Assembly (NCBI RefSeq): GCF_000143415.4
Contig: NW_003314368.1
Location: forward strand, 454,792 to 518,791
DNA from: Selaginella moellendorffii
Taxonomy: Eukaryota > Plantae > Lycopodiophyta
Direction of reading: 5' to 3'
Length of the DNA stretch: 64,000 bases
Part shown: piece by piece, positions 3,287 through 64,000 of the stretch
How the letters are laid out: every line of letters begins with the position of its first letter
Numbering within the stretch: position 1 is the first letter of the stretch
Notes under the pieces: model-generated
Database searches by the model: none
Seen by the model: the letters and a program-made list of their open reading frames with translations, nothing else
Told to the model about the DNA's origin: nothing
Position numbers and translations under genes: made by a program

Positions 3287-3368
3287 TCCCGAGCCCTAAA
3301 CCCTAAGCCCCAGGACACACGTGGCATAAGCTAAGTAAAACAGGTGGTTAGATTATAGCCGTTGAGTT

Positions 3369-8773: not shown

Positions 8774-8845
8774 CGCGAGCGATAAACCCTAATGCCGCAA
8801 ACCCTTAAACAAATGTTACTTCTTATTACTTGGAACGAGGAACGA

Positions 8846-35349: not shown

Positions 35350-37949
35350 TGTTAATTTAGACTATCAGTCCCTTTAATATTTCAGTTGTCAAAAGGATTT
35401 CAAGGTTACTTTGCTTGTTGGCAAGAGTTTTTGTAAGAAATGTTTATTAAGATTCAATATAAGCATGGGGGTGATGATAAAGTGGTTGATGCATTATCCA
35501 AAATAATAAATTTTATCTCATTGATGAAGCTATTTAGCAATCTTTTGAGTTTATAGAGTTTATTGACTTCAACTCTTTTATCACTAATATTTGAGCAAAG
35601 GTTTTGTTGAGGAATATCTTTACAGATTTGAATGGTGACAAGTTTGCATCATTTAAGATAAGATGGAATTCTGACATGTGGTGGTTCCTTATGTTGACAA
35701 ACTCATCAAATAAATTTTAGTTAAATGTCATGATGTGTGAAGTGTTAGACATTTGGGGGTATTAAGAATGTATATATTAGTGAAGAAGCATTTTTTGGCC
35801 TAGGATGAAATCAGATATTAAGAAGTATATATATGGTTATTTGACTTACCAAAAGGTTAAAGTTGATTATCAAAACTTGCTAATCTCTATCATCCTTTAC
35901 ATGAGTCACTTGTGGACAAGTCATTAGCTCTTTCATAATACCTCAAAGGAGTTGCATGACATAAAGTCCCCTAAGGATGCTATTTGAGCTATTTTGGATC
36001 ATTTAACAAAGATGGTTCATTTTTTCCTAGTAAAAATAACAATTAAAGCTTTTAAATTTGCTTAATTTTTTATAGACCAATTATTTAGTCTCTATAGTTT
36101 ACCAAATGATATTGTGAGTGATCGGGAAAATTCACTTCTAAGTTTTGGCAAATGATCTTTAAGAAGCTAGAGACTAAGTTGAGTATGAATAATGGTGAGC
36201 ATCCATAATCAAATGGGCAAACAGAGCATATGAATCAAATGTTAGAAGATATATTAAGGTTTTTTTTGGGAAATTTAACTTAATAAAGAGCATAGGAGTA
36301 CTATTTGTCTTTGCTCATAATAGCATTCATTAATCAGCTATTAATATATCTCCATTTATGGTGATGTATGGTTATAAGGCTAAGTCTCTTGTAAGTTTGA
36401 GTTTGGCTTTGGTTTGGGTACCTCATGCTTGTGATTTCCTTATGCAAGACAAGCTTGAGTTGGCAAAACTGAATATGAGGCAAGCTCAAAATCGAGATAA
36501 AAGATTGGCTGATGAACATTATCATTATCAAGAATACAAAGTTGGTGACAATATTTTTCTTAAATTGTTAGCTGCACAATGGTCTTTGAAAAGAGGTGGT
36601 AGTGCTAAGTTGGCTTTATAGTATTGTGGGCCTTAAACAATTTTACAATGTGTGGGAGATTTTGTTTACACTTTGGACTTGTTAGCTAGTTTAAAGATTC
36701 ATCTAATATTCCATATAAGCAAGCTTAAAGTGTGTTTGCACTCTAGTGATCAATCCATTATCCAAGTCCTAAAGATTTATGTTGAGAAGGTTGGTCCAGC
36801 TAATATTCTTGCTCAAAGATTGGTGAAAATTTATTGTAAGATAATTTGGGAATTATTAGTTTGTGGAATAATTATTCTATAGACGAAGCTATATGGGAAA
36901 TTAAGGATGATATGAAGAAAGTGTTTTTGAGTTTTGACAATCTTGAGGAAGGGGAGAATTAAATTCTATAGCTGTATTGTTATATAATTTAATCCATTTG
37001 TTTTGTTCTCATTCTCTTGTTTTCATGACTATATTATCATGCAAAAAAGCTATATTGCTTTCTTTCTTTCGTAGCTATTTGTTACAATATTGGTGTTACC
37101 ATTTGCACATCCTTTCCTTATGACCATATTGCATTAAACTCCCTTTATGTAAAACTCATTTAGCTTCTTGAGGTCATGAAATGATACAAACCACAAGAAT
37201 ATTCTAAGAATATTCTATGGCCCGAGGTTGTGTTGCGAATGTGACTTCGGGTATCGAAAGTTATCTGTTGACCAGTCTTTACGGACACTCTTACCTTACT
37301 GCCACGACGGCAGGAGGTCGGTATTGCTAGACCCTTTATCAGTCCCTCTTGTGCTAGTGGAGTTAACTGGGCATTTCGAGTGTACTTAGACCGGACGAGC
37401 ATAAGGACAGAATTCCTACGTGTTATTAACTAAGCATACTTAGCCCGGTAAGGAGTTCCCGTCTCATTTTGTCTTGCACTTGCTAATGACAAAAACCCTT
37501 GCGTATTGAGACTAGTCCCTCAATATCGCTACATGATAGCTTACCGTATCTGCCAAACACCCTCGCTATCATGCCTTTTGTGTTAGTCTCATTTCGGTCC
37601 CAAATGCTATTTATAGAAAGTGTCTAGATTTGCTCATTTGGCATATCTACGGAATGTAGAGATCGGCCTGAACACAATTGTAAGATAGGAACTCTTTACT
37701 GGGCTAAGTATGCTTAGTTAATAACACATAGGAATTCCGTCCTTATGCTCATCCAATCTAAATACACTCGAAATGCCTAGTTAACTCCACTAGCACAAGA
37801 GAGACTAATAAAGGGTCCAGCAATACCGACCTCCTACTATCGTGGCAGTAAGGTAAGAGTGTCTGTAAGGACTGGTCGATAGGTAATTTTCAATACCTGA
37901 AGTCACATTCGCGACAGGTTGGCCTAGGGTTTACTCCTTTTTCATTTCA
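35350..37949 (+). mobile_element. Ty3/Gypsy (chromovirus-type) 3' part: rest of RNase H, integrase, chromodomain, PPT, 3' LTR
   Basis: LDYQSL*YF, KVVDALSK, KHFFWPRMKSDI, DHLTKMVHF, PNDIVSDR, NGQTEHMNQMLE, HLIFHISKLK; PPT gaggaaggggagaa at ~36946; LTR ends catttca at 37949 like the 19807 LTR end. Confidence 0.88.
37231..37916. mobile_element. 686-bp foldback element, 238-bp inverted arms, TG..CA termini, 5-bp TSD
   Basis: 37231-37468 is the reverse complement of 37679-37916 apart from scattered substitutions; GGTTG at 37226-37230 and 37917-37921. Confidence 0.9.
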
Positions 37950-39259
37950 CTTGAGCTAGATACTAGACATGTATCCAAAGGGATAGGGTTCTACTTACAT
38001 TATTGAAGCTGCCCAAGGGGCTCTGCAATTTTTTCAAGGATAGACTCCATGATAGTTTGATGCTCATGGCCGAGCCTTCCTCATGCAAGGAGAGCCAGCT
38101 TTACATGCACGACCACAGCAGTGACTCACCGCGACTCATGTTGCATAGCATGTTGGTGAATTCCCTGTCAGGCAGATTGATTGTCGGGCAGAAAATCTAT
38201 GAGTTGGATCTTTCCAAACTATCTGTAAGAACTTCAGTAGTATAAGTGTTACTATGATCATACCTGGGGTATCTTGTGCTCGTAATCTGAGTAGGGAAAG
38301 TTTGGGCAGTAATTCCCATGGAACTTGATATATAAATCCTGTGATTAAACATCTTATAAAAAACATTTCTAGGAAACAAAGAAGAAAAACCTGGCTGCAG
38401 CTTCCTCATTGTTCCATGAGCCTATGTAACTCTGCTTGCTCTTTTCTCATCAGCAAAAAGAGAAAATCAGCATGACTGTCAAAGAACTTCTTTGAGAAAG
38501 CCAGAGATAAAGAGAATCTAACATCCTCACCAAGTGTGTCTCCCACCGCTTGATTCGCTTGTAGAACAAACTCCAATGTAGAGGGACGACTTATTAGTGT
38601 ATCTCCTCACTGACTTCGGCGGGTTTCTCTTCCTTTTGCCTGATTCTTGTTGCTTGGACGATCTCCCTGGTCTTCTTCATAGCACATCTCTTGATCTTAG
38701 AGCTCGGGCTGTGAGACGAAGCCTTCATCAAAGAAGTCGGGCTTGGACGTCTCTCCATCACTGAGGATGGAAACGTTGGAGATGAGATCGACCTCTTCCT
38801 CCTCGAATACGTAATACACATCCTCGGCGTTGTCGTGACCACAGCGCTCCTTTCCATGGAAGACATTGTATCTACATCTAAAGGTTGCGAGGAAGCTAAG
38901 TTGGTAGCTGCCTTGGTCACAGCCCGAGTGGCCATGGAGGGGGCCTCCCGCTTCTCCGTGGCGATCACCGGATGATCATCATCACCAGACTCACCATCGG
39001 TGGATAAACTCGAGTTCGCGGGTTCTTCACTGCCATCTTCTTCAGTCTCCGATTGAGCAGCCCATGATGAAGAGGAATCCGAGCATGCAGCGCTTGCCAA
39101 CTCTACTGCTGCCATCGCTGGTGATGGTGGTGCTAGACAGCGTTGCTTTGTTCTTGGCGCCCTTGATGTTGCTGGAGGGGGGCAATGCAATAGGGGCTCA
39201 GGATCATCACCATGATCATGAGGTAGCACTGGTGTGGGATCAGCTGGAGGGACTTCCAA
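37950..39259 (-). pseudogene. 5' half of double-AP2-domain (euAP2-like) gene, copy A
   Basis: N-terminal low-complexity/basic region, then frameshifted YIGV..YKRIKRWETH, GSWNNEEAAAR, PNFPYSDYEHKIP, APWAASI; collinear with 45500-46850 inverted. Confidence 0.8.
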
Positions 39260-39355
39260 AACATGCTGGCTACTATGCTTATTATAACTAAATGACTACT
39301 ATGACTACATATATTCTGGTTTATACTATAACTCAGCTATAACTAGTTAGTTATA

Positions 39356-41037
39356 GTCTCCCCAAACCTCCCTCGTGAGACTTGACTTGGGAGCTGCTGG
39401 TGGATCATGGTTGCTGCTTCCTCCACCCTAACTGTGGCAGCATTTGTCTTCTGCTTGACCTTCCTATCATGAACGCTGTATGCTCCCTTTTCTGTCCAGA
39501 CCGTGCAGATTTCTTATGTACTGAATGAAGTCATTCTCAGCCAAGGTGATCCACTGTAATATCGTTAGATGGTAAATCAATCAGAACATGCAAACACAAT
39601 CACCTGTGGCATCTCGTCAGTGTAGTTTTCATATGCGAAGTGGAGGTTTTTCTCCCTGCTGAAGAATCTGATAGCCCCTCAATCAGTTCCTGTCAAAACA
39701 ATGTGTTAGAAACAAGTGCAGTTTTAGTTTTTCTTAAACCTTGCTGCCTCCTCTTGTGTCTCATATGCCCCTGCGCTTGGAAATTCAAACATAAACAATG
39801 GCTCTTTAAATATATAACAAAAAACTCACAGTCGAATCGTACGACGCCTCAGCCTGCGGCAAAGATGAAAACCACAGTGTTCGAATGCTGAAGGTCTTTT
39901 GTTGGCTTAGATCAAGTTTTACACTCAAGTAATGCAACTTGAGTCTGATCTTGGCATTATCCAAGTAAGCTAGTACTTACGTTATGGAAGCCGCCCAAGG
40001 GGCTTTGCGATTTTTGAGAAGATACACTCCGTTATGGTTTGATGCTCGAGGCCGAGTCTCCCTCGTCCCAGCGCCATATGCAAGAAGCTCCGGTGTAAAC
40101 CAGAGCAACGACTGGCCAGATGTTGATGAACTCCTTGTTGGGGAGATTGATCCACTGCAGCGAAAATCCAAGTGTTACATCGATCTTTAGAACTACCTGG
40201 AAGAACTAGTCTATGAGCGCTCCTATGATTATACCTGGGGTATCTCGTGCATGTAGTCTGAGTAGGGAAAGTTTGGGCAGTTTGTCCCACAGAACTTGAT
40301 GTAAGATCCTATTACTTATCAAAAAGTTTCCAGGAAAGAAAGAAGAAGATGAAGAAGAAGAAGAAGAAGAGAACCTGGCTGCGGCTTCCTCGCTGCTGCA
40401 TGAGCCTATATAAATCCTCTTGTTGCTTTTGCCCATACCCTGATGATCAGGAAAGAGAGAAAATTAAAAAAAAAAACCACCAGAGAAAAAGACCAAAAGC
40501 AAAGAACATCCTCACCAAATGTGCGTCTCCCACCGCTTCCAATGCAGGGGGACGACTTATTGGTGTATCTCCTCGCTGACTTCGGCGGGTTTCTCTTCCT
40601 TGTGCCCGCTTCTTCTCGCTTGGATGATGCCACGATCTCCCTGGCCTTCTTCTTCGCACCCTTAGACGTTTTGATCCTAGAGCTCGAGCTGCGAGACGAA
40701 GCCTTGATCGCAGTCGAGGTTGGGAGTCTGTCCCTGAAAACGGTGGGGGTGAGGTCGAGGTGATAGCAGACCTGTTTCTCCTCGAATACGTAACGCACAT
40801 CCTCGGGGTCCTCGGGATCAAAGTGGAAGTCGTATCTAAATCTAAAGCTTGCTTGGAGCTCCTCAAAGAAATCGCTTGGTGGCCGCCTTTGTCGCGGCCC
40901 GAGTGGCTATGGAGGGCGCGTCCTTCTCCTCCATGGTAATGATCGCCGGATTATCATCACCACCCGACTCACCAGTGAAGGAAGACAAGCTCGCCGGTTC
41001 TTCACTGCTATCAATTCAATATTCTCCGATTTAGCAG
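39356..41037 (-). pseudogene. AP2-like copy B (5'-truncated); left arm of long inverted repeat
   Basis: KRIYIGSCSSEEAAAR, IKFCGTNCPNFPYSDY, GAYETQEEAAR; near-identical reverse complement of 42199-43874. Confidence 0.85.
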
Positions 41038-41039
41038 AG

Positions 41040-41810
41040 TAAACACACTCTGCGATAGTTTGATGCTCGAGGCCGACTGTTCCTCATGCCACCGACACTT
41101 GCAAGAAGCTCCGGCGACTCATGTTGCGTAGCATATTGATGACCTAGATTGATCCCCTGCAGAGAAAATCCAAGTGTTAGATCGATCTGTCAAACTATCT
41201 GGAAGAACTTCGGTATCCTAAGTGCTAATATGACACACCTAGTGGGAAAAGTTTGTGAGGTCGTAGATCCTAGTTTAAGAATCTTAACAAAAAACTTTCT
41301 ACGAAAGAAGGAGAAGGAGAAACCTGGCTGCGGCTTCCTCGCTGCTGCATGCAGCAAGGTATATTTGCTTCTTTTGTTCTGCCTTAGCCCTGAGGATCAA
41401 GAAAATGAGAAAATCAGCGTGATTGTAGAACGAGACTCCAATGTAGCAGGACGACTTATCAGCGTATCTCCTCGCGCACTTTGGCGGGTTTCTCTTCTTT
41501 TTGCTCCCTTCTCCAAGCTTGGACGAAAATCCCTCCCGAGCCACCCCCGAGCTGCGAGAAGAAGCTAGAACCTTCCTTTCCATAGACGTAGAAGCACGAA
41601 TGTGGCCATGGAGCTTTGCGACTCCACTGCTGCCATTTCTGGTGATGGCGGCACTAGACAGCGTCGCTTTGTTCTTGGCGCTAGCACTGATGACGGCCAT
41701 GGTTGCTCAGTGTTTGCATGCTGAATGCCGGCGGTGCATGTGCTTGATAGTGGGACCTTCATTCAGGAACTTGGGCTAACTCCAGAATCCCATTGTAAGA
41801 ACCTCCACAA
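41040..41810 (-). pseudogene. AP2-like copy E, heavily deleted
   Basis: KKRNPPKCARRYADKSSCYIGVSFY; KKQIYLAACSSEEAAAR. Confidence 0.75.
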
Positions 41811-41840
41811 CCCAGTTGCTTCAAAGAGTCCTTTTTCCAG

Positions 41841-43990
41841 ATGGAGCTGGGATTCCAGATTCACAGCGTCGCGGCCACATCCCTGGATGAAGATCCCACT
41901 ATCAAGCACATGCGCTGCCGGCATTTGGCATGCCAGGCTTGAGCGACAGATTTTCCAAGGCCGTCACCTCTTTCTCGCCACCAACAAGTCTCTCCAGCTG
42001 ATCCGGCGCCCCTGGCAGGTGTCGAGCAGCCAGTGCTAGCCTCTGAAGCTCCTTCTCGTGATGATCCTGTGCCTGCATTGACATTGCCCCCAGTAGCTCC
42101 AGCAGCGTCGAAGGCGCCAAGAACAAAGCGACGCTGTCTAGCACCAGAGATGGTAGCAGTGGAGTCGTCTGCATGCTTGGATACCTCTTCATCATGGGCT
42201 GCTAAATCGGAGCATTGAAGAAGATAGCAGTGAAGAACCGGCGAGCTTGTCTTCCTTCGCTGGTGAGTCGGGTGGTGGTGATAATCCGGCGATCATTGCC
42301 ATGGAGGAGAAGGACGCGCCCTCCATAGCCACTCGGGCCGCGACGCGACAAAGGCGGCCACCAAGCGATTCACTCGGGCTTCCTTGAGGAGCTCCAAGCA
42401 AGCTTTAGATTTAGATGATCCCGAGGACCCCGAGGATGTGCGCTACGTATTCGAGGAGAAACAGGTCTGCTATCACCTCGACCTCACCCCCACCGTTTTC
42501 AGCTTCAGCGACGGACAGACTCCCAACCTCGACTGTGATCAAGGCTTCGTCTCGCAGCTCGAGCTCTAGGATCAAAACGTCTAAGGGTGCGAAGAAGAAG
42601 GCCAGGGAGATCATGGCATCATCCAAGCGAGAAGAAGCGGGCACAAGGAAGAGAAACCCGCCGAAGTCAGCGAGGAGATACACCAATAAGTCGTCCCCCT
42701 GCATTGGAAGCGGTGGGAGACGCACATTTGGTGAGGATGTTCTTTGTTTCTGGTTTTTTATTCTCTCTTTCCTGATCATCAGGGGTATGGGTAAAAGCAA
42801 CAAGAAGATTTATATAGGCTCATGCAGCAGCGAGGAAGCCGCAGCCAGGTTCTCTTCGTCTTCTTCGTCTTCTTCTTTCTTTCCTGGAAACTTTTTGATA
42901 AGTAATAGGATCTATGACCGAGCTTACATCAAGTTCTGTGGGACAAACTGCCCAAACTTTCCCTACTCAGACTACATGCACGAGATACCCCAGGTATGAT
43001 CATAAGAACGCTCATAGACTAGTTCTTCCAGGTAGTTCTAAAGATCGATGTAACACTTGGATTTTCGCTGCAGTGGATCAATCTCCCCAACAAGGAGTTC
43101 ATCAACATCTGGCCAGTCGTTGCTCTGGTTTACACCAGAGCTTCTTGCATATGGCGCTGGGACGAGGGAGACTCGGCCTCGAGCATCAAACCATAACGGA
43201 GTGTATCTTCTCAAAAATCGCAAAGCCCCTTGGGCGGCTTCCATAACGTAAGTACTAGCTTACTTGGATAATGCCAAGATCAGACTCAAGTTGCATTACT
43301 TGAGTGTAAAACTTGATCTAAACCAACAAAAGACCTTCAGCATTCGAACACTGTGGTTTTCATCTTTGCCGCAGGCTGAGGCGTCGTACGATTCGACTGG
43401 GTGAGTTTTTTGTTATATATTTAAAGAGCCATTGTTTATGTTTGAATTTCCAAGGGCAGGGGCATATGAGACACAAGAGGAGGCAGCAAGGTTTAAGAAA
43501 AACTAAAACTGCACTTGTTTCTAACACGTTGTTTTGACAGGAACTGATTGAGGGGCTATCAGATTCTTCAGCAGGGAGAAAAACCTCCACTTCGCATATG
43601 AAAACTACACTGACGAGATGCCACAGGTGATTGTGTTTGCATGTTCTGATTGATTTACCATCTAACGATATTACAGTGGATCACCTTGGCTGAGAATGAC
43701 TTCATTCAGTACATAAGAAATCTGCACGGTCTGGACAGAAAAGGGAGCGTACAGCGTTCATGATAGGAAGGTCAAGCAGAAGACAAATGCTGCCACAGTT
43801 AGGGTGGAGGAAGCAGCAACCATGATCCACCAGTAGCTCCCAAGTCAAGTCTCACGAGGGAGGTTTGGGGAGACCTCGTTTCGGAGGGCTTGGAGGGCAG
43901 CAAGGAAACTAGATGGTCACTAGTTTTCTTGCGTGAGTGCTTCACCATGACAGTGCCATTAGTTTTTTCTCGTGACTGCTTTACAATAAC
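41841..43990 (+). pseudogene. AP2-like copy C; contains right arm of long inverted repeat
   Basis: KKIYIGSCSSEEAAAR|IYDRAYIKFCGTNCPNFPYSDY; second repeat GVYLLKNRKAPWAASIT|LRRRTIRL|GAYETQEEAAR; frameshifting deletion at the start of the first AP2 domain. Confidence 0.85.
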
Positions 43991-45378
43991 ATCCCAAGGG
44001 GACGGTGATCGGAATAAAATATCCCAGTCGTGAGTCCGAATGTTGAGCGAGCAAGTCGGACATAAAAGCAGAAAAGAAATTTGAATTTGAATATGTTTAT
44101 AATTTATAAACACAAGGAGCGCGGGCTTGCAATAGCAAAAGCAAAAGTAACTATTGATGTATTGGAGAGGCATCGCATTTTACCATCTGCGGCTCTGTGG
44201 AGACTCCCTGCAAGCAGCTCAATCCTGCCCATAGTCACAGGCATGCGATCGGTCCATTCAGCAGACCATGCGTGCTCCAAGGACGTCCAATTTACTATCA
44301 TTGGATTGGCAATATCTTTCAATTGCTCAATTACTCGCTCTCCTCTTCCACAGCAGGAGTGGCAGGTCCCACATTTTGTAATTTGACCGCTTTTCGAATG
44401 GCCCCCAGAACCGAATAGTAGGTACTTGGACTTGGAATCTGCCGCATTTTTGTTTTTAAATTGAATGTAATGCAGCAACGATGGGTGCCACAGCTAATCA
44501 AGACATGGAAATTTCTCGGGAATCTTGTGGCTTGCGATGAAGGAGGATTAGAAAAAGGTTTTATATAAGTTTCTTCTTCTTCTTCCTATCCCACATATTT
44601 TATTTCCTTCCAGAATGACAATAGATACCAATCAAAATAATTTAACCAACACTACCAAATCTACAATTTTCCACAATTGCCTGCGATTCTTTTGTAAGAA
44701 TTCAGGCTATTTGTGTTGATCCATGATGAAGTGACTTACAGATTTGGTACGCAAGTAACTCTTGGGTGGTGTTGTTCAAAAGTATTTCACCAGGATTTAG
44801 ATGTAAATTATAATTCCTCAGCTTTGGTACACAAGTAAAATGTGTTTTTCAATGCTTTCTTCAGGTGTTTGGATACTTTCAAATGTTCATATCTGTTAGC
44901 TCTCATTCACCAACGCGTTGCATTTCAATTGACCTCTGATGCACGCCGCGCATTTGACGCCCATTGTCACATGCTCAAGAATTCTTGTTGTCTCGCGATA
45001 ATTCATGCAATTTAATTCTTCTCATTGCTGACTAGGAGAAAATTAACCGCTACTGAATCAGTGTCGATACTTATCCGGATACACAGGGTATAGTTGTCAT
45101 TTTCGTACGCGGCGCTGCGTACGCACCTGCACTGGTACGGAAAGTTTTAATGGGCGGCTGCGATGGCTTGCAGTCGTCATGGACGGCCACGATTTTTCAT
45201 ACGTCTCGTGGCCAGTAGAAGAAAAAGGAGTCAGTTCTCTAGTTCCTTCAGTTTCTTGTTTTGCAGCATGCCTCGCTTGAATCCTGTTAGATCGTACAGG
45301 GTAGCAGCGGAACCTTGGATTGCGGCGCCGCCGCAACCCAGTCGCCACGCTTCGTTCTTGTCGATAGAGCTCCTCGAA

Positions 45379-47410
45379 ATGGAGGTTCTTGCAATGAGAT
45401 TCCAGGTTCCTCCAGATGATCACGACGCGCCCATGTCCCCAGATCAGGATCCCACTATCAAGCATACTCGTTGTCGGCGATCGAGCAAAAGATTTTCCAC
45501 CCGATCGTCTTGGAAATTCCTCCAGCTGATCCCGCGCCAGTGCTAGCAGCTCCTCCTCATGATCATGCTGATGATCCTGCGCCCGCATTGGCATTGCCCC
45601 TGGTACCTCCAGCAGCGCCGAGGGCGCCAAGAACAAAGCGACGCCGTCTAGCACCGACATCACCAGCGATGGCATCATGGCAGCGGTAGAGTCGGCAAGC
45701 TCTGCATGCTCGGATTCCTCTTCATCATGGGCTGCTCAATCGGAGAATGAAGAAGATGGCAGTGAAGAACCGGCAAACTCGAGTTTCCACCGATAGTGCG
45801 TCGGGTGATGATGATCATCCGGTGATCGCCACGGAAAAGAAGGAAGCCCCCTCCATGGTCACTCGGGCCGCAGCCGCCAACCTAGCTTCCTCGCAACTTA
45901 GATACGACGTCTTCCATGGAAAGGAGCGCTGTGGTCACGACGACGCCGAGGATGTGCACTACGTATTCGAGGAGGAAGAGGTCGATCTCATCTCCAACGT
46001 TTCCAGCCTCAGTGACGGAGAGACCTCCAAGCCCGACTTCTATGATGAAGACTACGTCTCGCAGCCCGAGCTCTAAGATCAAGAGGTGTGCTATGAAGAA
46101 GACCAGGAAGATCGTGCAAGCAACAAGAATCAGGCAAAAGGAAGAGAAACCCGCCGAAGTCAGCGAGGAGATGCACCAATAAGTCGTTCCTCTACATTGG
46201 AGTGTCGTTCTACAAGGCGAATCAAGCGGTGGGAGACGCACATTTGGTGAGGATGTTAGATTCTCTTTATCCCTGGCTTCTCAAAGAAGTTCTTTGACAG
46301 TCACGCTGCTGTTTTTGTTGATCATCAGGGGTACCGGAGAACAGAGCAAGAAGATTTACGTAGGCTCATGCAACAGCGAGGAAGCTGGAGCCAGGTTTTT
46401 CTTCGTTGTTCCTAGAAAGGTTTTTGATAAAATGTTTAATCACAGAATCTATGATCGAGCTTACATCAAGTTCCGTGGGAACAACTGCCCGAACTTTCCC
46501 TACTCGGATTACGAGCACGAGATTTTTCCCAGGTATGATCATAGTAACGCTTACACTAAAGTATTTCCAGATAGTTTGGAAAGATCTAACTCTTAGATTT
46601 TCTCTGCAGTGAATCAATCTGCCCAACAGGGAATTCATCAACATGCTACGCAACATGAGTCGCGGCAAGTCATTGCTGTGGTTTACACCCGAGCTTCTTG
46701 CACTTAAAGTTGGCTCTCCCTGCATGAGGAAGGCTCGGCCTTGAGTATCAAACTATCACGGAATCTATCTTCTAAAAAATCACAAAGCCCCTTGGGCGGC
46801 TTCCATAACGTAAGTAGAGCCCCATCCCTTCGGAAACATGTGAGAGATCATCTAGCCTTTGAGAGACCATCTAGCTACCTGGATGATAACTCAATGTTTC
46901 ATTGATCAATCTGAGTATGAAACTTGATCGTAGGCAATAAGAGATCACAGATTATCACCATTCTAACACTGCTTTACATCTTTGCTGCAGGCTGGCCTGT
47001 CGTACGATTCGACTCGGTGAGTTTTTTATTTTATGTTTCAAGAGCCATTGTTTATGTTGCATTTCCAGGCATATGAGACACAAGAGGAGGCAGCAAGGTT
47101 CAAGAAAACTAAAACTTCACTCTCTAATTATACTAGGTACCACGTTGTTTCTAACATTGTTTTAACAGGACCTATGACCGAGCAGTTATTAGGTTCTTTG
47201 GCAAGGCTAAAGAACTTTGCATATGACAACTACACCAATGAGATGCCACAGATGATTTTTGTTTGCATTTGAGAACCATTCAGGATGACATTACAGTGGA
47301 TCACCTCAAGGACGAGTTCATTCAGTACATACAGAATGTCAGGACAAGCTTGCAAAAGGGAGTTCAAAGGATGTACAACTGAAAGAGCTGTATATGATAG
47401 AAAGGTCGAC
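45379..47410 (+). pseudogene. AP2-like copy D, most complete copy but frameshifted
   Basis: YIGVSFYK(+1)RIKRWETHIW|GTGEQSKKIYVGSCNSEEAGAR|IYDRAYIKFRGNNCPNFPYSDY; APWAASIT|LACRTIRL|AYETQEEAAR|TYDRAVIRFFGKAKNFAYDNY. Confidence 0.85.
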
Positions 47411-47899
47411 TTTCTAATAATTAATATAGAAAAAATAATTTATTTAATTTTATGGTGTGAGGTTTAGCTATGAACTCGTAGTGGGCCAATTTTAATGATG
47501 AATTTTTTTGGTTTGCTTATTAGAAATCACTTGATTAGCTTCTGGAGCTGTTATGCAAGTTCCCATAGCTGTGAGAGACAATATGAGAAGATATGAAGCA
47601 ATAGTAGAAGATCTTTATTGCTAGAATCTTGAGAAGCTGAGATTTAATTATTGTGCCATTATCAAAAACCAAGCCACTATGCCACCATTATGTAGGAAAT
47701 CTTAGCCACACCGTAAGCTGCCATGGTAGATCAAAGACACTGCTACTGTGCAGATACTATGGCGAGATAAGAGGGGAAATTCCCTCTCTCAATATTTGGC
47801 ACCGAGTGGTTCACCATGGCAGGAGGGGAGAAAGCTTATCCCCTCTCCCTCACAATTTGGTGCTGAAGTATATGGATTATCAATGCCGAGGGTCAAGAT

Positions 47900-49250
47900 T
47901 ACAATCCACATTCACTATGCTATTTAGTTGGCTGAATGGCACAAAGGTGTTGAATTTTCTAAGTCCTCCACACCATTTGGTCAGCTGAATGGCCAAATTT
48001 TAATATCATCTCCAAAAGTTTCATTTGATTTTTTTTAACATCTCCAAACCATTTGGCCAACCAAATGGCACAAAGTAATTAAAAAATTAACATTTATTTA
48101 CTACTTTTTACCCCAAAAACTGCTCTTATTGTAGAACCTAATCCAAAAGTCTTGGTTGTAAAGAAGCAACAACGTACTAGATCTTTCATATGACATAGTG
48201 GGAGGAATTGGTAATTGGGAAGTTGCTCTCCATTTGAAGAGGACAATATCAAGAAACACAAAGGTAAGATGGCAAGTGTGACAATAAAGGCTAAGGGCAA
48301 GAAGAAGGGTAGGAAAAAAATGATTGAGGAATGAAAAGATGAATAAAAAGGAAAATGGTGATAAAAGGGGATTAGACAAGTTATAATGGTAGTAGTGTGC
48401 AAGTTCATGCACTTTAATATCTTTAGGATAATTATAGATAAGAGGAATGAGCATTGGGGTGGGATCAATGCCTTCCTCAATGAAACAAGAGCAACATTCA
48501 AGAAGGGAAAACAGATTCATGAGTACATGACTCATCTTGTCATCACCAACCTCCTATTGAACTTTAAAGAAGATACTAACTTATTTCCAAAGTGGTAGGA
48601 GTGCAATGAAGAACTCATCAAGCAATTGATTGGATTGTAGAACATGGTTAATGATTATAGTGTCATATGAAGAGGTGTGGATTCTTGCTTTCTGAGAGAC
48701 TAGTCACTAACGTTTGGTCGTTCATCCCTCATTCAATATTGTAGCAACCATCCATTTGGCTTTTCCAATGACAAGCTCAAGGTAATATACAATCTCAGTG
48801 CAAAGCATTGATCATATCATCGACTGTGTCTTTCTCTCTTTGATAGATTTTCTTTGCAAAAGAAGCTTTAGATAATGTCTTGCACACTAAATTTCTTCTT
48901 CATTCTCATGGTGGCTACGGCTATAACTTCTTGGCTAATAAATAATGAAATAGATATATAACAATTTTCACATTCCCTTTGTCTCCAATCTTTTGACTAG
49001 ATGCGCTTATCTCTCCAATCACAATTGAAGAAACATCATGTTCCTGATAAAACATGTTTGCATTCACTTGCATGCTTTGTAGATTGTAGCTATGCAAGAA
49101 TGTCACCTAGTTCTTATTTGTTTATAATTTTTTTTTCTTCCACAGTGATGGCTATGATTGCTAAGCAACTAGATTTGTTGCTATCGTCCAATTCCATTGC
49201 AAAAATTGCTAGACTTTAGGTAAGATAATTATGTTATTTTGATGCTATAG
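47900..49250. mobile_element. possible decayed DNA transposon (hAT-like) remnant
   Basis: Clustered short direct/inverted motifs (gctgaatggc, ccatttgg, aatggcacaaag) at 47925-48075; only weak transposase-like resemblance in 48921-49106. Confidence 0.3.
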
Positions 49251-55387: not shown

Positions 55388-55536
55388 CTAGTTAGCTCCA
55401 AAAGTTTTTTGCAACTCAGCAATAGTAAGGGCTGTTTGGTGTATATGAATATCCACTTTAGGATCCTTGTGCAAAATGTTGATGAAGATGTAGTACATAT
55501 GTTTGCAAGGAACATATGCCTTCCCATGTTCTTCGC
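55388..55536 (-). pseudogene. 3' end of SWIM zinc-finger gene split by LTR element
   Basis: Encodes EEHGKAYVPCKHMYYIFINILHKDPKVDIHIHQTALTIAELQKTFGAN*, continuing the frame broken at ~62727. Confidence 0.8.
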
Positions 55537-58500
55537 TGTAAGCGACTAAATTTTTCATTTTACTTTAGTCACTTAACCACACCTCCAACCACTTGGAGGA
55601 GTCTCACTCACAACCTCCATAAATCCTATTCCGGACTTAGGGATTTGCTAGCCCCAAGAATGGCATCCGTGCCACTCAACCGTTGCACTTGGTCCAAATG
55701 CTCTACGTGTCTAGTCCCATGATTGACACCCAAAGGTACCATTGACATATCGGCCCGTTACACCAAGGCCATACCCATTCACCTTCACGAGTGGTCATCC
55801 CAGATCCACTCTTTAGCATCTTTAAGATGCCTACAGACATGGGGAATACCCTTCCCCAATATCCTTTTGTCAGTTCCTACTAAGTCTCTTTTCTGTCTAT
55901 GGCCATGTTTGCCAACACTGCCACTCGATCAAGGCCCGTAGGCCTGGCCATTAAGTCTCATTATCTTTTGGGACTTCCTCACCATGTGACCATATCCTTA
56001 GTCACTACACTAGAGGACTGCTCCTCCTCCTTTCCCCAGTTTGGGACTTCGGGACAACATTTTGGAACACCGTGGCCCTATGTGAGCTCCGTGGGTATTC
56101 TCCCCACCTTCCACCTTTAGGTGCTCTAGCCATGGGCTCAGAACGAAGTTCCGTTGAGCCATACCAGGTATCCAAGTAGGTAGTGCCACCCACACTTGGA
56201 CTGAGAACATCGACCATTCAATCTCCCAGGGAAAGTAGCCGGCTCTTGAACACTTCACCAAGCTACCCCGCTTGTTGGTCTGTATTCACTCTAACCTTGG
56301 ACCTCTTAGTGGTTATCCCATCACCCAACACCTAGGTACAGCCTTCCTTGGCCAAATTGGCCTTTTCTGGCCAAACTGGCTCCACTAGAGTCCTCCCCTT
56401 ACTATACTTTTGGAGCTCACCAAACCCCCTAGGGTCTGGGAGATGAACGCTTTGGGCTTTCACCCTCTCAGACTTGAACTCAGACTCGGACTCGGACTCG
56501 GACTCGGACTCAGACATGGACTCAGACTTGGGCTTGGGCTTGGGCTCGGTCTCAGCCTCGGCTTTGGTCTCAATCTCGGTCTCGGTCCCGGTCTTGGTCC
56601 CGGTCTCGACTTCGGACTCCATCTCGGGTCCTTCTCGAACTCCATCTCGGATTCCATCTCGGGTCTATCTCGAACTCCATTTCGGTCCATCTCGAACTCC
56701 ATCTTGGACTCCATCTCGGGTCCATCTCGGACTCCATCTCAAGTTCATCTCGAACTCCATCTCAGACTCCATCTCAGGTCCATCTCGAACTCCATCTCGG
56801 ACTTCATTTTGGGTCCATCTCGGACTCCATCTCGGGTCCATCTTAGGTCCATCTCGGACTCCATCTCGGGTCCATCTTGGGTCAATCTCGGACTCCATCT
56901 CGAACTCCATCTCGGGTCCATCTCGGATCCTCTTGTGTCCCTTTTCTAAAGACTCTTTTATTGCTCACTTCATGCTCATTCCTTGAGCACTCCGTTGGGA
57001 GTTCCACTCCCGCTCTTGACCTTTCAAGTCGAAGCCTTTTAGTCCAAATGTGTTACGCTCGTTTGGCTTTCGCTTTGGCCACTACCACGTGGCACCCTTT
57101 CGGCTCCACTTTGGGGCTTAGGGATTTGTGTCTCACAACTCCACCACCCATAGACGAAGTTCGATGTCCTCATCGAACGATAAACTATTTTATAAAGTAA
57201 TACCAATATGTATTACCCTTCCCATCCTTGGCATCTAGCCAATATTCGTCAAGGGTCGGACACCAAAAGCTCACTTTGCCTTGTCTACCCTCTAAAGAGC
57301 ATAGTCTCTCCAACATAAAGACTCGATTGACCACTTGTGGTGGTTTTTTCCCTTTTATTGGTTTAGCTTTTGCTAAACCCATTAGAAACACCTTCTCTAT
57401 CTCAATTCCACTACTCATTGTCGAGTAGTCTTAACTTCTATCGATATAACCATTCATCTTTGGAACTTTTAGTCTTGACTTTTCGAAGTCAATTTCCTAA
57501 GTGTCCTTGACACCTTTCATTACATATATTGTGCAAACTTCATTTCCCCATCCTAGGGAGTTCTCTAATTGAGGGCACCCTCCTCCTTTCTATTTTGTGC
57601 CACTTTTGACACCAAGTTCCAGTTATCATAAGTTGTGCTAGAGTTGTTCATGGCCCTATCATTTGGCTACTTTGCCACTCCCTCCCTTGGAGCTTTCACC
57701 TTTGCTAACTTGGAGCAATTAGGAATCCATCCTTGGAAGCACACTTCCTTTCTCACAATCTGTTAGCATATAACATATTAGTGTTCCATGCCTAACTTTG
57801 CCATTTGGATTCCTTCTAATGAACTCCATGGCCCACACTTGGCCACTAGATTTTTTGCTTTCATCCGTTGATTGTTGCACTTGGGCAACATAAGATTACT
57901 ACCTCCATTCTTGAGGTATCTTTTTGGTTCTATGACAAAGGCTCTACTTTGCTAAGTCCAGAGGGTGCTTACCCCTAGTAGGTCTATTTAGTATTTTCTT
58001 CTACAAGCTCCATCCATGGCCTAACTTTGCGACCCTTCCATAGGTCTCTCCTAAAGACTACTTTCTTGGACTTACTATACTATCGTATTGGCACAACTGA
58101 TTTCCCTTTAGTGCTCTTCTTTAGGTGTGCTTCCCACTTGGTCACCTTGACCAAATCACACCATTATCAATAGTTCAAATCAACACTTTGAACTAGGAAT
58201 CATATTCCTTAACCCAAACAAAGACCTTATCCTTATTTAGCCACACGATCACTTAGTGATCTCATCTTGACCCCTTAACAGGTTTACCAATAAGAACTAG
58301 ACCCTTTTTAAATTGTTGACTATGACTTCGAGGTCATCCCCCATACTTGGCAGTGTGCCCAAGCTAGCCCTTCCGACCAAGGATCCATAGCAACTGAGGC
58401 TGGGTGTCCCCATCTCATTCACCACGTCCTTGGTGCCCTTTGCACTAAAGTGGTCAAGTTAGATATGCCGAGCTTTCACGACTCCGGAGCATCCCCCATT

Positions 58501-61500
58501 TGGCGGTGTGCCCAAGCCAATCTCCTCACTAAGAGTTCATGACCACCGAAATATGAGTGTCCTCATATTCCAAACCATCACCACACCCTTGTGATTTGGG
58601 ACTCGAACCCAAGCACTAGAGGGTTGGGACTTGAACCCAACCTCCGTATATGCATCTACGGATGACATCACCCTAGATGCCTGGTGTGACTCCCCATGCC
58701 GGTGCACCAATTTATATCCAAAGTGCGTTACGGATCATAACTTAGGAACCTAGTCCCTCCATATTGTCAAGTCCTCTCACTTGACAAGTCTATGATCATG
58801 TATAGACCCTTCCATGCTTGGCCCTATGGGCCACCCTTTTTGAAGTTAGCACTTTCAACTAGGGGATTTGTTCCCCTAACTTGCTACTCTCGCTTCGCAA
58901 GTCATCCGACCAATCTAACATAGTTTCATGCATAAGCGTGAAAGTCCTTAACCATCGACTTTCGTTCAAAGTCATCCCTTTGAACATTCGGGAACTACTT
59001 CCTAACTTGGATAGCATTGCCTCATGACAAGTTTCAAGACCACGCTTTTGCTATGTTACTCTGATTTCGCGCGTTCTATGAACCATTTACACTTGGCTTT
59101 CTAGGTACTATGCTACATAAAATTGTCTTTGGGAACCTTGAAGGAACTCTATCCCTTAGCTTGCTAAAGCCTCTCCTTTCCCAGATCTAAGAGCCTAAGC
59201 ATTCGATCAGAGTGAATGAAGAGAGTGATTTTCTCTCTTTGCAAGAAAAATAGCTAGGCTTTCTAATTGCCATATGGTCTAGTATGGACAATTCCATGCT
59301 TTAGACTCTTCATGGCACCACAGTTGCTAATAACAACATGCTCGAGCGCCCACTTGATTCTCCACTCTCAATTGACATAACCACCTTTGGTTATGCTCTT
59401 CGATTCTTATGGTTTGGTTCTATCCCCTTACTACTTACTTTTGGCCTCACACATTTCCTTTGGTTATTCGCTTCCAAACTAGGAGGATAGCTTTGCACTT
59501 TCTACCATGCTTTAACAAGTATTCTTGAGGATGAACCTACCCGATAGCTTAGGGAGTGGTTCCTCAATTCGGGTATGCTCACCTTATAATCCCACACACC
59601 AGGATTAATGTTGCTACATATAGACCTTTATATGGCTATTATTAGCCTTGCCAAAATTCTATTTTTGGCTTTGTTCAATTCAAGTAAACGGACTTCTCTC
59701 GTCTTTGCAACCTTGGACGTTTGGATAGCACCTTCTATCCATCATTCACTAAGGATTTAATCCCTTGGGCTTTGTCTATTGCCCTCGCGATATCAAACAC
59801 CACCTCTTGGTGTTCTAGATGTTTAGATGTCCCAATGATGGACTCTTTGACAATGAACATTCCCTTTTACAACATTGACTTACTATATAGGCACATAAGT
59901 AATTTATCCCCTCTATCTAACTTTTTTATGCCATTAAGAAGTCTTGGGTAGCTACCTGCTACCAGTTTAATTGATTATTTTACACTTTTTGTTTAGTTGC
60001 CTCATAGTTGTCAAGTCCTACAACTCATTGCTGGTGCTTCCACACCTCTATCATTATCTAGGTCACCACACTTCAATTGCATGCCTTCTAGCTTAGGCTA
60101 TGCCATTCCCATTTCCATTAGGATTCCTTTGGGAAGGGGTTCTCGTGAACCCGCCAACTCACCTTAAGGTATTACGCCTTGGCACATTTGGTGTCTCCAC
60201 ACCATCAGCTCCATGAGCTTACTTTTATGACACTTCTTACTTGTGCCTAGGTCCATGCCAAGACCAATACAGTTCTTTCTCATACCAATTATCCGTTAAC
60301 ACTACACCATAGAGTTTACTCACAACTTTGTGTCAAAGTTGTTTCTTCTAGGAACACCTTCCCCACAACTTTAGTATGGCACATTCCGCCATCGATGAGA
60401 TACTCACTGTTCTCATACTTAGATATTATGATCGTCTTCAACCTTCGTGGGGCACAACAAACCTCAGTCCAAATGCTTTTAGCAATCCCTTAGGACCATT
60501 CTTTGACTCTACTTGAGTCATTTAGCATTTTTGGACTTTAAAATCTAATAACCCATAAGGTCCTATTTAAGGTGCTAGCTCGTTGGAATACAATTTCTTG
60601 TATTTATGTCCTACTCATAAGGACCATCTTTACAAGTGTCACTCCAACACTTGATGTTATTCCCTGGGGGCAACTTTTGCCTCTTAGGACTACTTGTCTA
60701 TGTGATGAGATTACTAACTCATCCTTTAAGTACACCCCTAACTCCTTGGGTTGTTTTAGCATTTATTAAAGGTGGCCTCAACTACCATTTCAAGGACTTG
60801 TGTCCTTTTCCGTATTTGACCTTCCACGGTCATTAAGTTTGGTCTCAAATTCATGAGCACCAACCTCAACTATATAAGGATAATCTAATGACTCCTTTAT
60901 TGTTTTGGAGTCTTTATTTTTCCTGTGATCCCAACTATAGTTGTTTACCACAACTACATTAGTCAGTTTGCTGAGTCAAACGTTCATTTGGATCACATCC
61001 TCAACTGTTTGAGGAAAACCTTATACTGTTCCCAAGATCCCGAAGTTGTTCCATTATTCGACCTTTTCTATCCACCACCTCACGTACAAGTTCACATATG
61101 AATTGTAGTGGAGAGCCATGTCTTCCCGACCTACTACTCCTCACGGATAGGCCCACTCCTAGGACCTTCTGATGCCAACACCAGTGGTGATATACTTGAG
61201 CACTAATAAAAGTCGGACTAAGGAACAGCTATGATACCAAATTGTAAGCGACTAAATTTTCCATTCTACTTTAGTCACTTAACCACACCTCCGACCATTT
61301 GGAGGAGTCTCACTCACAATCTCCATAAGTCCTATTCCAGACTTGAGGACTTGCAAGCCCCAAGAATGGCATCCGTGCCACTCAACCGTTGCACTTGGTC
61401 CAAGTGCTCCATGTGTCTGGTCCCACGACTAACACCCAAAGGTACCATTGACATATCGGCCCGTTACGCCAAGGCCATGCCCATTCACCTTTGCCACACT

Positions 61501-62726
61501 AGTAGTCCAATACCACTAGCATCACAGTCCTGTCTCTCCAAAACTGGGTCATCCATCCACGAGTGGTCATCCCAGATCCACTCCTTAGCATCCTTAGGAT
61601 GCCTATAGATATGAGGAATAGCCTTCCCCAATATCCCTTTGTCAGTTCCTACCAAGTCCCTTTTCTATCCATAGCCATGTTCGCCGACACTGCCACTCGA
61701 TCAAGGCCCGCAGGCCTAGCAACTAAGTCCTATTGTCCTTTGGGACTTCCTCACCATGTGATGTATCCTTAGTCACTACACTAGAGGACTGCTCTTCCTC
61801 CTTTCCCTAGTTTGGGACTTTGGGACAACATTTCGGAACACCGTGGCCCTACGCAAGCCCCATAGGTACTCTCCCCACCTTCTGCATTTAGGTGCTCTAG
61901 CCATGGGCTTAGAGTGAGGTTCTATTGAGCCACACCAGGTATCCAAGTAGGTAGTGCCACCCACACTTGGACTGAGAGCATCGACCATTCGATCTCCCAG
62001 GGGAATTAGAGCCGGCTCTTGAACATTTCACCAAGCTACCCCGCTTGTTGGTCCGTATTCACTCTAACCTTGGACCTCCCAGTGGTTATCACATCACCTA
62101 ACACCTGGGTACAGCCTTCTTGGGCCAAACTGGCCTTTTCTGGCCAAATTGGCTCCACTAGAGTCCTCCCCCTTACTATACTTTTGGAGCTCACCAAACC
62201 CCCTAGGGTCTGGGAGATGAATGCTTTGGGCTTTCACCCTCTCAGACTCGAACTCGGACTCGGACTTGGACTCGGACTTGGACTCGGACACGGACTCAGA
62301 CTTGGGCTTGGGCTTGGGCTCGGTCTCAGCCTCAGCCTTGGTCTTGGTCTCGGTCTTGGTCCCTGTCTCGACTTCGGACTCCATCTTGGGTCCTTCTCGG
62401 ACTCCATCTCGGATTCCATCTCGGGTCTATCTCAGACTCCATCTCAGACTCCATCTCGGTCCATCTCGGACTCCATATTGGGTCCATCTCGGACTCCATC
62501 TTGGGTCCATCTCGGGTCCTTTCGTGTGCTTTTTCTAAAGACTTTTTTATTGCTCACTTCATGCTCGTTCCTTGAGCACTTCGTTGGGAGTTCCACTCCT
62601 GCTCTTGACCTTTCAAGTCGAAGCCTTTTAGTCCAAACGTGTTATGCTCGTTTGGCTTTCGCTTTGGCCACTACCATGTGGCACCCTTTCGGCTCCACTT
62701 TGGGGCTTAGGGATTTGTGTCTCACA
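55537..62726 (-). mobile_element. full-structure LTR retrotransposon (Gypsy-like), internally decayed
   Basis: LTRs 55537-57136 and 61243-62726 (tgtaag...ctcaca); Met PBS tggtatcatagc (rc of 61228-61239); purine-rich PPT next to 57137; TSD ttcgc/ctcgc; protease-like YLIDGG near 60390. Confidence 0.93.
56478..56930. repeat. 6-mer (gactcg) and 12-mer (gactccatctcg) tandem arrays inside the LTR; shorter version at ~62245-62520
   Basis: Seen directly in both LTRs. Confidence 0.9.
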
Positions 62727-63821: not shown

Positions 63822-64000
63822 AGTTGGGGTGTATGCGAGGTCCTCAAGTGGTTGATCCTAATGGAAAAGGCAATATTAAGAGATAATAAAATGAGAAGAA
63901 AAAATAGAAACCAACTTGAAAAGAGTGCTGTCCCTACTGGAACATCCTAACTTCCCACCACCCTAACTATGACTCAAGTTGTGGTAGGCAACTTATGTTT

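What the first reader, a model, noticed from the sequence alone, without database searches (positions are those of the whole stretch)
39356..43874. Near-perfect inverted duplication (~1.7-kb arms) of an AP2-like gene: candidate hairpin-siRNA / proto-MIRNA locus
Seen: 39356-41037 and 42199-43874 are almost identical reverse complements, introns included. The ~1.2-kb spacer is itself partly palindromic (41640-41690 vs 42114-42160; 41715-41765 vs 41883-41933). Copies E and C start head-to-head only ~35 bp apart, leaving no room for a promoter between them. Both arms carry the same frameshifting deletion in AP2 repeat 1, so neither makes an intact protein. Established: inverted duplication of target genes is the standard model for the birth of plant MIRNA and hairpin-siRNA genes. 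Inference: read-through transcription would fold into long dsRNA whose small RNAs could silence this AP2 subfamily in trans.
Basis: partly seen in the sequence, partly recalled or inferred. Interest (0 to 1): 0.8.

Follow-up and report, generated by a model that had tools for sequence, protein, structure and literature searches.

The report
Mirror-image copies of a dead AP2 gene
In the spikemoss Selaginella moellendorffii, a broken copy of a DNA-binding regulator gene was copied in reverse beside itself; RNA read across both copies would fold into a long double strand, but nothing shows that it is read or silences anything.

Summary
Window 39356-41037 and 42199-43874 are reverse complements. 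They are 98.2% identical at aligned bases (30 substitutions in 1635), with 10 indels, and the match runs through the introns.

The window is Selaginella moellendorffii scaffold GL377672.1. The repeat is the youngest layer of a 9.4-kb mirror cluster of five dead double-AP2 gene copies: A, C and D on the minus strand, E and F on the plus strand.

- **Both arms are dead.** C and E share three frame-breaking lesions. Two of these are also in a third copy, X, on scaffold GL377605.1, so the gene was dead before the duplication.
- **E is the original.** E keeps the flanks it shares with X. C is the secondary copy, with new junctions at both ends.
- **No promoter between the copies.** The inner copies D and E face away from each other and are both cut at about codon 33-37 of exon 1.
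- **Hairpin potential is real but untested.** One transcript across the locus would form a ~1.6-kb stem (-3751 kcal/mol). That would need a promoter outside the repeat. No RNA or small-RNA data could be reached.
- **Few possible targets.** Intact-looking paralogues are only 65-69% identical. The best shares six exact stretches of 21-31 nt with arm E.

Verdict: a real but ordinary pseudogene palindrome. It is at most an unproven member of the known class of inverted-repeat siRNA loci, and it is not a proto-MIRNA. The scan also noted this same stretch as a nested palindrome in note s1-341565.

The parts
39356..41037 (-). Left arm, copy C. A pseudogene copy without 5' end or promoter. It runs from the N-terminal region to the 3' end of the gene, introns included.
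   Evidence: Searches show the inverted match to 42199-43874. One search gives the tblastn match to family reference P0004. Searches show that C lacks the flanks shared by E and X, so it is the secondary copy.
42199..43874 (+). Right arm, the core of copy E. This is the part of E that was copied to make C.
   Evidence: The public model SELMODRAFT_428826 (P0010, 286 aa) lies at 42436-43763.
41038..42198 (.). Spacer, which would be the loop of any hairpin. It is made of truncated copy D (minus strand, about 41037-41830) and the 5' part of copy E (plus strand, about 41835-42198).
   Evidence: One search gives tblastn pieces of D (aa 201-243, 307-352) and of E (aa 45-132). Searches show the short mirror matches. 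In one search, 768 of 1161 spacer bases pair within the spacer.
41775..41874 (.). Axis of the palindrome. D and E meet head-to-head here. Both are cut at about codon 33-37 of exon 1, with no start codon and no room for a promoter.
   Evidence: 73-nt arms 41702-41774 / 41875-41947 with 100 nt between them; reading of the codons on both strands.
42698..42719 (+). Junction of the 23-nt frameshifting deletion in AP2 repeat 1 of E. The same junction lies in C at 40527-40548.
43098..43119 (+). Junction of the 17-nt frameshifting deletion in the linker of E. The same junction lies in C at 40109-40130 and is also present in X.
43538..43556 (+). 2-nt deletion and resulting in-frame TGA in AP2 repeat 2 of E. 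The same lesion lies in C at 39674-39692 and is also present in X.
39263..39355 (.). 93-bp AT-rich filler between C and the 5'-truncated copy A. It ends in a 20-nt near-palindrome at 39337-39356.
37967..39262 (-). Copy A, the outer left copy. It lacks exon 1. Its 3' part lies at about 19270-19742, beyond an 18-kb insertion. It is broken by stops and frameshifts.
   Evidence: It is about 84% identical, inverted, to F at 45507-46841.
43875..45267 (.). Spacer between E and F. It is homologous to the spacer between X and A' in the related locus, and it presumably holds F's upstream region.
   Evidence: L001:3669-4676 matches 44354-45314 at 68-77%
45268..47428 (+). Copy F, the outer right copy. It is the only copy that keeps the exon 1 start (MPRLNPVRS...). 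It is still broken: a 1-nt insertion in repeat 1 (after 46216), a TGA in the linker (46741), and a 5-nt deletion in repeat 2 (after 47212).
   Evidence: The public model is SELMODRAFT_428827 (P0002).

Best explanation
The locus is a real palindromic cluster of five decayed copies of a Selaginella-specific double-AP2 transcription-factor gene. The copies are A, C and D on the minus strand and E and F on the plus strand.

How the 1.7-kb repeat most likely arose:
- Copy E was already dead when part of it (42199-43874) was copied at the DNA level into the opposite arm in reverse orientation. That made copy C.
- C kept none of E's flanks, and it appears to have replaced the original spacer and the first exon of A. 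This fits templated break repair between the arms of an older palindrome (inferred).
- The centre-distal half of the arms was probably homogenised again later by arm-to-arm conversion (inferred).

What it does:
- The repeat encodes nothing.
- The three inner copies have no promoter of their own and point away from the axis, so none of the cluster's own gene starts can produce an RNA containing both arms.
- It is most likely a neutral structural by-product of a repeat-rich region.
- It has a latent property: any outside transcript that crosses it would fold into about 1.6 kb of near-perfect dsRNA and would be diced as an endogenous-inverted-repeat siRNA source. Those siRNAs would act mainly on the local pseudogene copies.

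Shown: the structure, the lesions, the order of events and the fold. Inferred: the repair mechanism and the lack of function.
For: Structure and identity.

Location: the window is GL377672.1, with window position 1 at record position 454792.

Family: it is a double-AP2 family. The reference SELMODRAFT_411646 (P0004) scores 44.5 bits on Pfam AP2 with two stretches, and its best PDB match is WRI1 at 3.6e-15.

Lesions: C and E share frame-breaking lesions, two of which are also in X. F and A are broken independently.

Order of events: site patterns are C-odd 15, E-odd 12, X-odd 48, and the ML tree gives ((C,E),X) with support 93/88 and 100/100. C and E are therefore the youngest split.

Direction of copying: X shares both flanks and the downstream spacer with E and not with C. 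The type-1 tree ((A,A'),F) is discordant with the type-2 tree ((C,E),X), which requires a transfer between the arms.

Centre: D and E are both cut at about codon 33-37, a few bases apart.

Related locus: it carries X and A' in tandem with no inverted partner within 9.8 kb.

Uneven divergence: 24 differences in 775 bases in the centre-proximal half against 6 in 860 in the distal half, p = 3e-4.

Hairpin fold.
Against: No expression, small-RNA or methylation data could be consulted, so 'no function' is an inference from anatomy.

Long near-perfect inverted repeats are often strong siRNA sources once any read-through occurs. An antisense start at F's upstream region, or read-out from neighbouring transposons, cannot be excluded.

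The very low divergence of the distal half could also reflect selection for pairing rather than neutral conversion.

Copy D is oddly distant from E in the tree (path 0.43, against 0.11 for A to F). The fold-back history of the centre is therefore not fully explained.
Confidence: 0.6

Rival explanations
1. It is an active endogenous-inverted-repeat (hairpin) siRNA locus. An outside Pol II promoter reads through C, the loop and E. The RNA folds back and Dicer-like enzymes cut it into 21-22-nt siRNAs. These act in cis on the cluster and perhaps in trans on intact double-AP2 paralogues.
For: The predicted fold has a 1.6-kb stem, with 21 perfect runs of 21 nt or more and the longest at 220 nt. Exact blocks of 25, 30, 21, 29, 31 and 24 nt are shared between arm E and the locus of the intact-looking SELMODRAFT_411646. 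Fewer are shared with other paralogues. The class is well documented: IR71 and MuKiller (PMC10827316), OGI/MeGI (PMC7048303) and the ARR17 pseudogene inverted repeat (PMC7403218). The low divergence of the distal half could reflect selection for pairing.
Against: There is no transcript or sRNA evidence. The copies point away from the axis, and D, C and E lack promoters. The founder was already a pseudogene, only 65-69% identical to the paralogues. The related locus on GL377605.1 lacks the inverted copy, so the repeat is not conserved. S. moellendorffii has no obvious 24-nt sRNA peak (PMC5569507).
Confidence: 0.3
2. It is an assembly artefact. The second arm would be the other haplotype's allele of copy E, wrongly placed in reverse, or the product of a chimeric clone.
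For: C to E divergence is 1.8% over the arms and 0.026 on the tree. That is close to the divergence of two clear haplotype pairs of the same family, at 0.017-0.020. The assembly holds both haplotypes, as the syntenic pairs L005/L006 and L004/L007 show.
Against: The window has no N, so both junctions lie inside Sanger contigs. C has two specific junctions with unique sequence (truncated D, and the filler plus A). It shares neither flank with E, as an allele would. The arms differ by 10 indels, unlike a chimeric snap-back. The axis itself lies between diverged arms (79%), not identical ones.
Confidence: 0.05
3. It is a gene fragment captured by a transposon. Copy C would have been picked up and inserted by a Pack-MULE, a Helitron or a similar element.
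For: The region is rich in transposons. There is an AT-rich 93-bp filler with a 20-nt near-palindrome at C's outer end. Another first-reader note reports a candidate Mutator-like element at 55388-64000 (unverified).
Against: No terminal inverted repeats or target-site duplication flank C. The filler has no other copy in the window or in the fetched loci. The copied segment sits in the mirror position within a pre-existing palindrome, which points to inter-arm repair.
Confidence: 0.05

Closest known systems
Endogenous inverted-repeat siRNA loci (endoIR-siRNA), such as Arabidopsis IR71 and maize Mu killer (reviewed in PMC10827316)
   Same: A kilobase-scale, near-perfect, non-coding inverted repeat. 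If transcribed as one RNA it would make dsRNA without needing an RNA-dependent RNA polymerase.
   Different: For those loci, Pol II transcription and siRNA populations were shown experimentally. Here neither is known, no promoter faces into the repeat, and the host has little 24-nt siRNA.
Pseudogene inverted repeats that silence a functional paralogue: persimmon OGI/MeGI (PMC7048303) and the poplar ARR17 pseudogene inverted repeat (PMC7403218)
   Same: A non-coding inverted duplicate of a regulator gene, made by local inversion or duplication of a paralogue.
   Different: Those repeats are documented to silence their targets through small RNAs (PMC7048303, PMC7403218). Here the founder was long dead, and only six exact blocks of 21-31 nt match the best candidate target.
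Young MIRNA genes born by inverted duplication of target genes (Allen et al. 2004, cited in PMC10827316; updated in PMC3237417)
   Same: An inverted duplication of a gene-family member as raw material for a foldback.
   Different: The stem is about 1.6 kb and the loop about 1.16 kb, not a short imperfect hairpin. No known miRNA family matches. At best this would be the earliest, pre-miRNA stage.
Palindromes maintained by arm-to-arm gene conversion, such as primate Y-chromosome palindromes (own knowledge)
   Same: Mirror arms carrying gene-family copies. The gene trees are discordant and divergence along the arms is uneven, which suggests sequence transfer between the arms.
   Different: It is much smaller, all copies are pseudogenes, and there is no evidence that conversion preserves function.

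Membership tests
endoIR / hairpin-siRNA locus | A long inverted repeat able to form an extended near-perfect stem | tested here: met
   MFE -3751 kcal/mol for 39356-43874. 1621 of 1682 left-arm bases pair with the right arm. Perfect runs reach 220 nt.
endoIR / hairpin-siRNA locus | Both arms lie on one Pol II transcript | not testable with these tools
   No RNA data were available. Exact-ORF look-ups in public assemblies found nothing. The anatomy argues against an internal promoter.
endoIR / hairpin-siRNA locus | A population of 21-24-nt siRNAs from one strand covering both arms | not testable with these tools
   No small-RNA data were reachable. No paper names the scaffold or the gene models.
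Young MIRNA (inverted-duplication model) | A short imperfect hairpin giving one dominant duplex | tested here: not met
   The stem is about 1.6 kb and the loop is 1161 nt.
Young MIRNA (inverted-duplication model) | Foldback arms similar to an intact target gene | tested here: inconclusive
   65-69% identity to the paralogue loci. Six exact blocks of 21-31 nt are shared with the SELMODRAFT_411646 locus.
Young MIRNA (inverted-duplication model) | A match to a described miRNA family | tested here: not met
   An Rfam scan of 36000-48500 found nothing in the arms, apart from a sub-threshold chance snoRNA hit in arm C (sR52, 40342-40398, 23.8 bits against a gathering score of 50, E = 0.19); two sub-threshold miRNA hits lie outside at about 47950-48090.
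Double-AP2 transcription factor (AP2/ANT/WRI-like) | Two AP2 DNA-binding repeats | tested here: met
   The family reference P0004 scores 44.5 bits on Pfam AP2 (cut-off 33.3) with two stretches, and matches WRI1 chain 7wq5_A at 3.6e-15. Remnants of both repeats are found in C and E by tblastn.
Double-AP2 transcription factor (AP2/ANT/WRI-like) | An intact reading frame | tested here: not met
   A 23-nt deletion in repeat 1, a 17-nt deletion in the linker, and a 2-nt deletion plus TGA in repeat 2, in both arms. No start codon or exon 1 start.
euAP2 (miR172-regulated) | A miR172 target site | tested here: not met
   No match with up to 3 mismatches anywhere in the window. The pattern was typed from my own knowledge of the site.
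Pseudogene-IR trans-silencer (OGI or ARR17-IR type) | siRNAs from the repeat repress an intact paralogue | not testable with these tools
   Only the sequence precondition could be examined, and it is weakly met.

The most novel reading that the evidence does not exclude
The palindrome is read through from outside in some tissue and makes 21-22-nt hairpin siRNAs. Through the six conserved 21-31-nt blocks in the AP2-repeat exons, these would lower the expression of the intact double-AP2 paralogue(s), such as SELMODRAFT_411646. I know of no example outside seed plants of a pseudogene inverted repeat regulating a transcription-factor family, in the manner of OGI/MeGI.
Probability: 0.07. Interest if true: 0.6.

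Novelty: new member of a known kind. Interest (0 to 1): 0.25.

Why it matters
If the locus does make hairpin siRNAs, it would show that the inverted-duplication route to small-RNA regulators of transcription-factor genes also operates in a lycophyte, a plant with a reduced 24-nt siRNA pathway.

As it stands, its main value is descriptive:
- It is a dated, step-by-step example of how a small palindrome of pseudogenes forms and exchanges sequence between its arms.
- It warns that the public gene models over it (SELMODRAFT_428826, SELMODRAFT_428827 and the 676-aa model) are stitched across frameshifts.

Tried and rejected
- **Pfam on single ORF pieces of the arms.** No AP2 hit, because the domain is split by introns. 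I used the public family proteins instead.
- **Exact-ORF look-ups for transcripts.** Two arm ORFs (194 aa and 68 aa) were looked up in public assemblies to find transcript contigs. Nothing is on record.
- **Paper searches.** Searches for the four local SELMODRAFT ids and two paralogue ids, and for both scaffold accessions, returned nothing. Banks et al. 2011 (PMC3166216) is not held.
- **miR172 site and Rfam.** No miR172 site and no meaningful Rfam hit in the arms.
- **A long terminal repeat next to copy A.** I looked for one that could read into the palindrome. None was found in 36801-38000. A Pfam call on the neighbouring ORFs failed because of stop codons, and I did not pursue it.
- **CpG depletion as a methylation signature.** The arms are at 0.71-0.74 and the paralogue genes at 0.79-0.89. 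The difference is too small to tell anything.
- **Haplotype mis-join.** Considered and rejected, because C shares no flank with E.
- **Spliced model.** ORFs were searched one by one by reference, and exon structure was read from tblastn of public proteins inside scripts.
Full report
**Observation**

The inverted repeat is real and lies at the stated coordinates. An inverted-repeat scan and BLAST of the window against itself match 39356-41037 to 43874-42199 at 93.6% over 1722 columns, gaps counted. In a MAFFT alignment of the core there are 30 substitutions in 1635 aligned bases (98.2%) and 10 indels of 1-24 bp. The match runs without a break through the introns, so the copy was made at the DNA level.

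41619-41681 matches 42167-42114, including a perfect 28-mer, and 41702-41774 matches 41875-41947 at 79%.

**Where it is**

A word search with one ORF found two Selaginella moellendorffii proteins. Fetching their contigs showed that window 35747-57382 is 100% identical to GL377672.1:490538-512173 of assembly GCA_000143415.2. Window position 1 is therefore record position 454792, and the arms are at 494147-495828 and 496990-498665. Earlier notes of this scan had already named the genome.

**What the gene is**

The copies belong to a small double-AP2 family. Two word searches, limited to proteins of similar length, found it only in Selaginella moellendorffii. The most intact member is SELMODRAFT_411646 (P0004, 482 aa). 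It scores 44.5 bits on Pfam AP2 with two stretches, and its best match among solved structures is the double-AP2 factor WRI1 (7wq5, 3.6e-15).

ORFs were searched one at a time by reference, and the exon structure was read from tblastn of the public proteins inside scripts.

**The larger structure**

The 1.7-kb repeat is the youngest layer of a mirror cluster of five copies.

| Copy | Strand | Window coordinates | State |
|---|---|---|---|
| A | minus | 37967-39262, 3' part at about 19270-19742 | Split by an 18-kb insertion; lacks exon 1 |
| C | minus | 39356-41037 | Left arm; no 5' end |
| D | minus | 41037 to about 41830 | Fragment, cut at both ends |
| E | plus | about 41835-43874 | Right arm is 42199-43874; cut at the 5' end |
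| F | plus | 45268-47428 | Only copy with the exon 1 start |

A 1.4-kb spacer separates E and F. A and F are about 84% identical.

All copies read away from the axis. D and E abut head-to-head, and both are cut at about codon 33-37 of the reference. D's homology ends near 41828 and E's begins near 41835-41850. Such a symmetrical cut suggests that the original palindrome arose by a fold-back at a break in exon 1. That is an inference.

**All copies are dead**

C and E share three lesions:
- a 23-nt deletion in AP2 repeat 1, with the junction after 42707 in E and before 40539 in C;
- a 17-nt deletion in the linker, after 43108 in E and before 40120 in C;
- a 2-nt deletion that creates an in-frame TGA in repeat 2, after 43544 in E and before 39686 in C.

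The last two are also present in a third copy, X, on scaffold GL377605.1. X has a still larger deletion in repeat 1. The gene was therefore dead before C and E separated.

F carries its own lesions: a 1-nt insertion, a TGA and a 5-nt deletion. A is interrupted and has stops. The public gene models over the cluster are stitched around these breaks:
- P0010 (SELMODRAFT_428826) covers E.
- P0002 (SELMODRAFT_428827) covers F.
- A 676-aa model on the minus strand lies at 38136-41700, fusing D and C with part of A.

**Order of events**

The related locus (L001/L008, GL377605.1) carries X and an A-like copy, A', in tandem. Downstream of A' is the same nested insertion that follows A. Directly upstream of X is a 7.4-kb LTR retrotransposon. 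No inverted AP2 copy lies within 9.8 kb.

- **C and E are the youngest split.** Three-way site patterns are C-odd 15, E-odd 12, X-odd 48. An ML tree gives ((C,E),X) and ((A,A'),F).
- **E is the original.** X shares both flanks and the downstream spacer with E and not with C. E therefore sits in the ancestral context, and C is a secondary copy with two new junctions.
- **What C displaced.** The junctions join C to truncated D at 41037, and to a 93-bp AT-rich filler before 5'-truncated A at 39356. C appears to have replaced the original inner copy, the spacer and A's first exon.
- **Likely mechanism.** I read this as templated repair of a break in the left arm from the right arm (inference).
- **Uneven divergence.** There are 24 differences in 775 bases near the centre and 6 in 860 in the distal half (p = 3e-4). 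This suggests a later arm-to-arm conversion.
- **Age.** C to E divergence (0.026 on the tree) is close to that of two clear haplotype pairs of the same family (0.017-0.020). A to A' (0.045) and X to E (0.052) are larger. GL377605.1 could therefore be a very diverged haplotype or a segmental duplicate.

**Is it an artefact?**

This is unlikely.
- The window has no N, and the genome was Sanger-sequenced (PMC5750206).
- C has two specific junctions with unique sequence and shares no flank with E.
- The arms differ by 10 indels.

**Hairpin potential**

Folded as one RNA, 39356-43874 has an MFE of -3751 kcal/mol. 1621 of 1682 left-arm bases pair with the right arm. There are 21 perfect runs of at least 21 nt, and the longest is 220 nt.

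The rest cannot be tested here, and the anatomy weighs against it.
- **No internal promoter.** None of the cluster's own gene starts can transcribe both arms, because D, C and E have no promoter and every copy points outward. A hairpin RNA needs an outside start, such as an antisense start at F's upstream region or transposon read-out. I could not identify one.
- **Weak similarity to possible targets.** The arms are only 65-69% identical to the intact-looking paralogues. Arm E shares six exact blocks of 25, 30, 21, 29, 31 and 24 nt with the SELMODRAFT_411646 locus, and fewer with the others.
- **No miRNA signature.** No miR172 site and no Rfam miRNA family is present.
- **Host biology.** S. 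moellendorffii shows no obvious 24-nt small-RNA peak, and CHH methylation was reported missing in adult aerial tissue (PMC5569507).
- **No data reachable.** No paper mentions the gene models or scaffolds. Exact-ORF look-ups found no transcript contigs.

**Comparison with known systems**

In shape this is an endogenous inverted-repeat siRNA locus of the kind reviewed in PMC10827316 (IR71, MuKiller). In origin it resembles the pseudogene inverted repeats OGI (PMC7048303) and the ARR17 pseudogene repeat (PMC7403218). It is not shaped like a MIRNA. It meets the structural criterion of the endoIR class. The two functional criteria, a single transcript and an siRNA population, could not be tested.

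**Verdict**

This is a real but ordinary pseudogene palindrome with a well-resolved history. I put 0.6 on a neutral by-product, 0.3 on some hairpin siRNA production, and about 0.07 on real trans-regulation of the AP2 family.

Noticed in passing
window 37231-37916; L001:11152-11174: A foldback element with 234-nt arms (89.5% identical) sits just beyond copy A. It is absent from the matching place in the related locus on GL377605.1, so it is an insertion polymorphism between the two loci.
   Followed up: partly
L008:1889-9248; window 55537-62726: An LTR retrotransposon lies directly upstream of copy X in the related locus. Its LTRs are at 1889-3526 and 7624-9248 and are 96.4% identical. It belongs to the same family (80-85% identity) as an element in the window.
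   Followed up: partly
P0004 (L003:6001-7987): In the intact family member, each AP2 repeat is followed by a linker-like motif (WINLPDKDFINMLRN and WITLSKEEFIYYIRN). By phmmer its second repeat matches WRI1 repeat 1 plus linker, and its first repeat matches WRI1 repeat 2.
   Followed up: partly
window 38136-41700 (-), 42436-43763 (+), 45747-47382 (+): The public gene models over the cluster are stitched around frameshifts and stops, and they are labelled AP2/ERF or uncharacterised proteins. They are a 676-aa model, SELMODRAFT_428826 and SELMODRAFT_428827. None reaches the Pfam AP2 threshold.
   Followed up: yes
window 42199-43013 vs 43013-43874 (and the mirror in C): Divergence between the arms is uneven: 3.1% in the centre-proximal half against 0.7% in the distal half (Fisher p = 3e-4).
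   Followed up: partly
window 41037-41830: Copy D abuts E in mirror position, yet it is very distant from every other copy in the tree (end branch 0.24; path to E 0.43). Its origin is unexplained.
   Followed up: partly
L005/L006 and L004/L007: Two other loci of the family each occur twice in the assembly, with the same neighbouring genes and about 2% divergence. These are clear haplotype pairs and give a yardstick for allelic divergence.
   Followed up: yes
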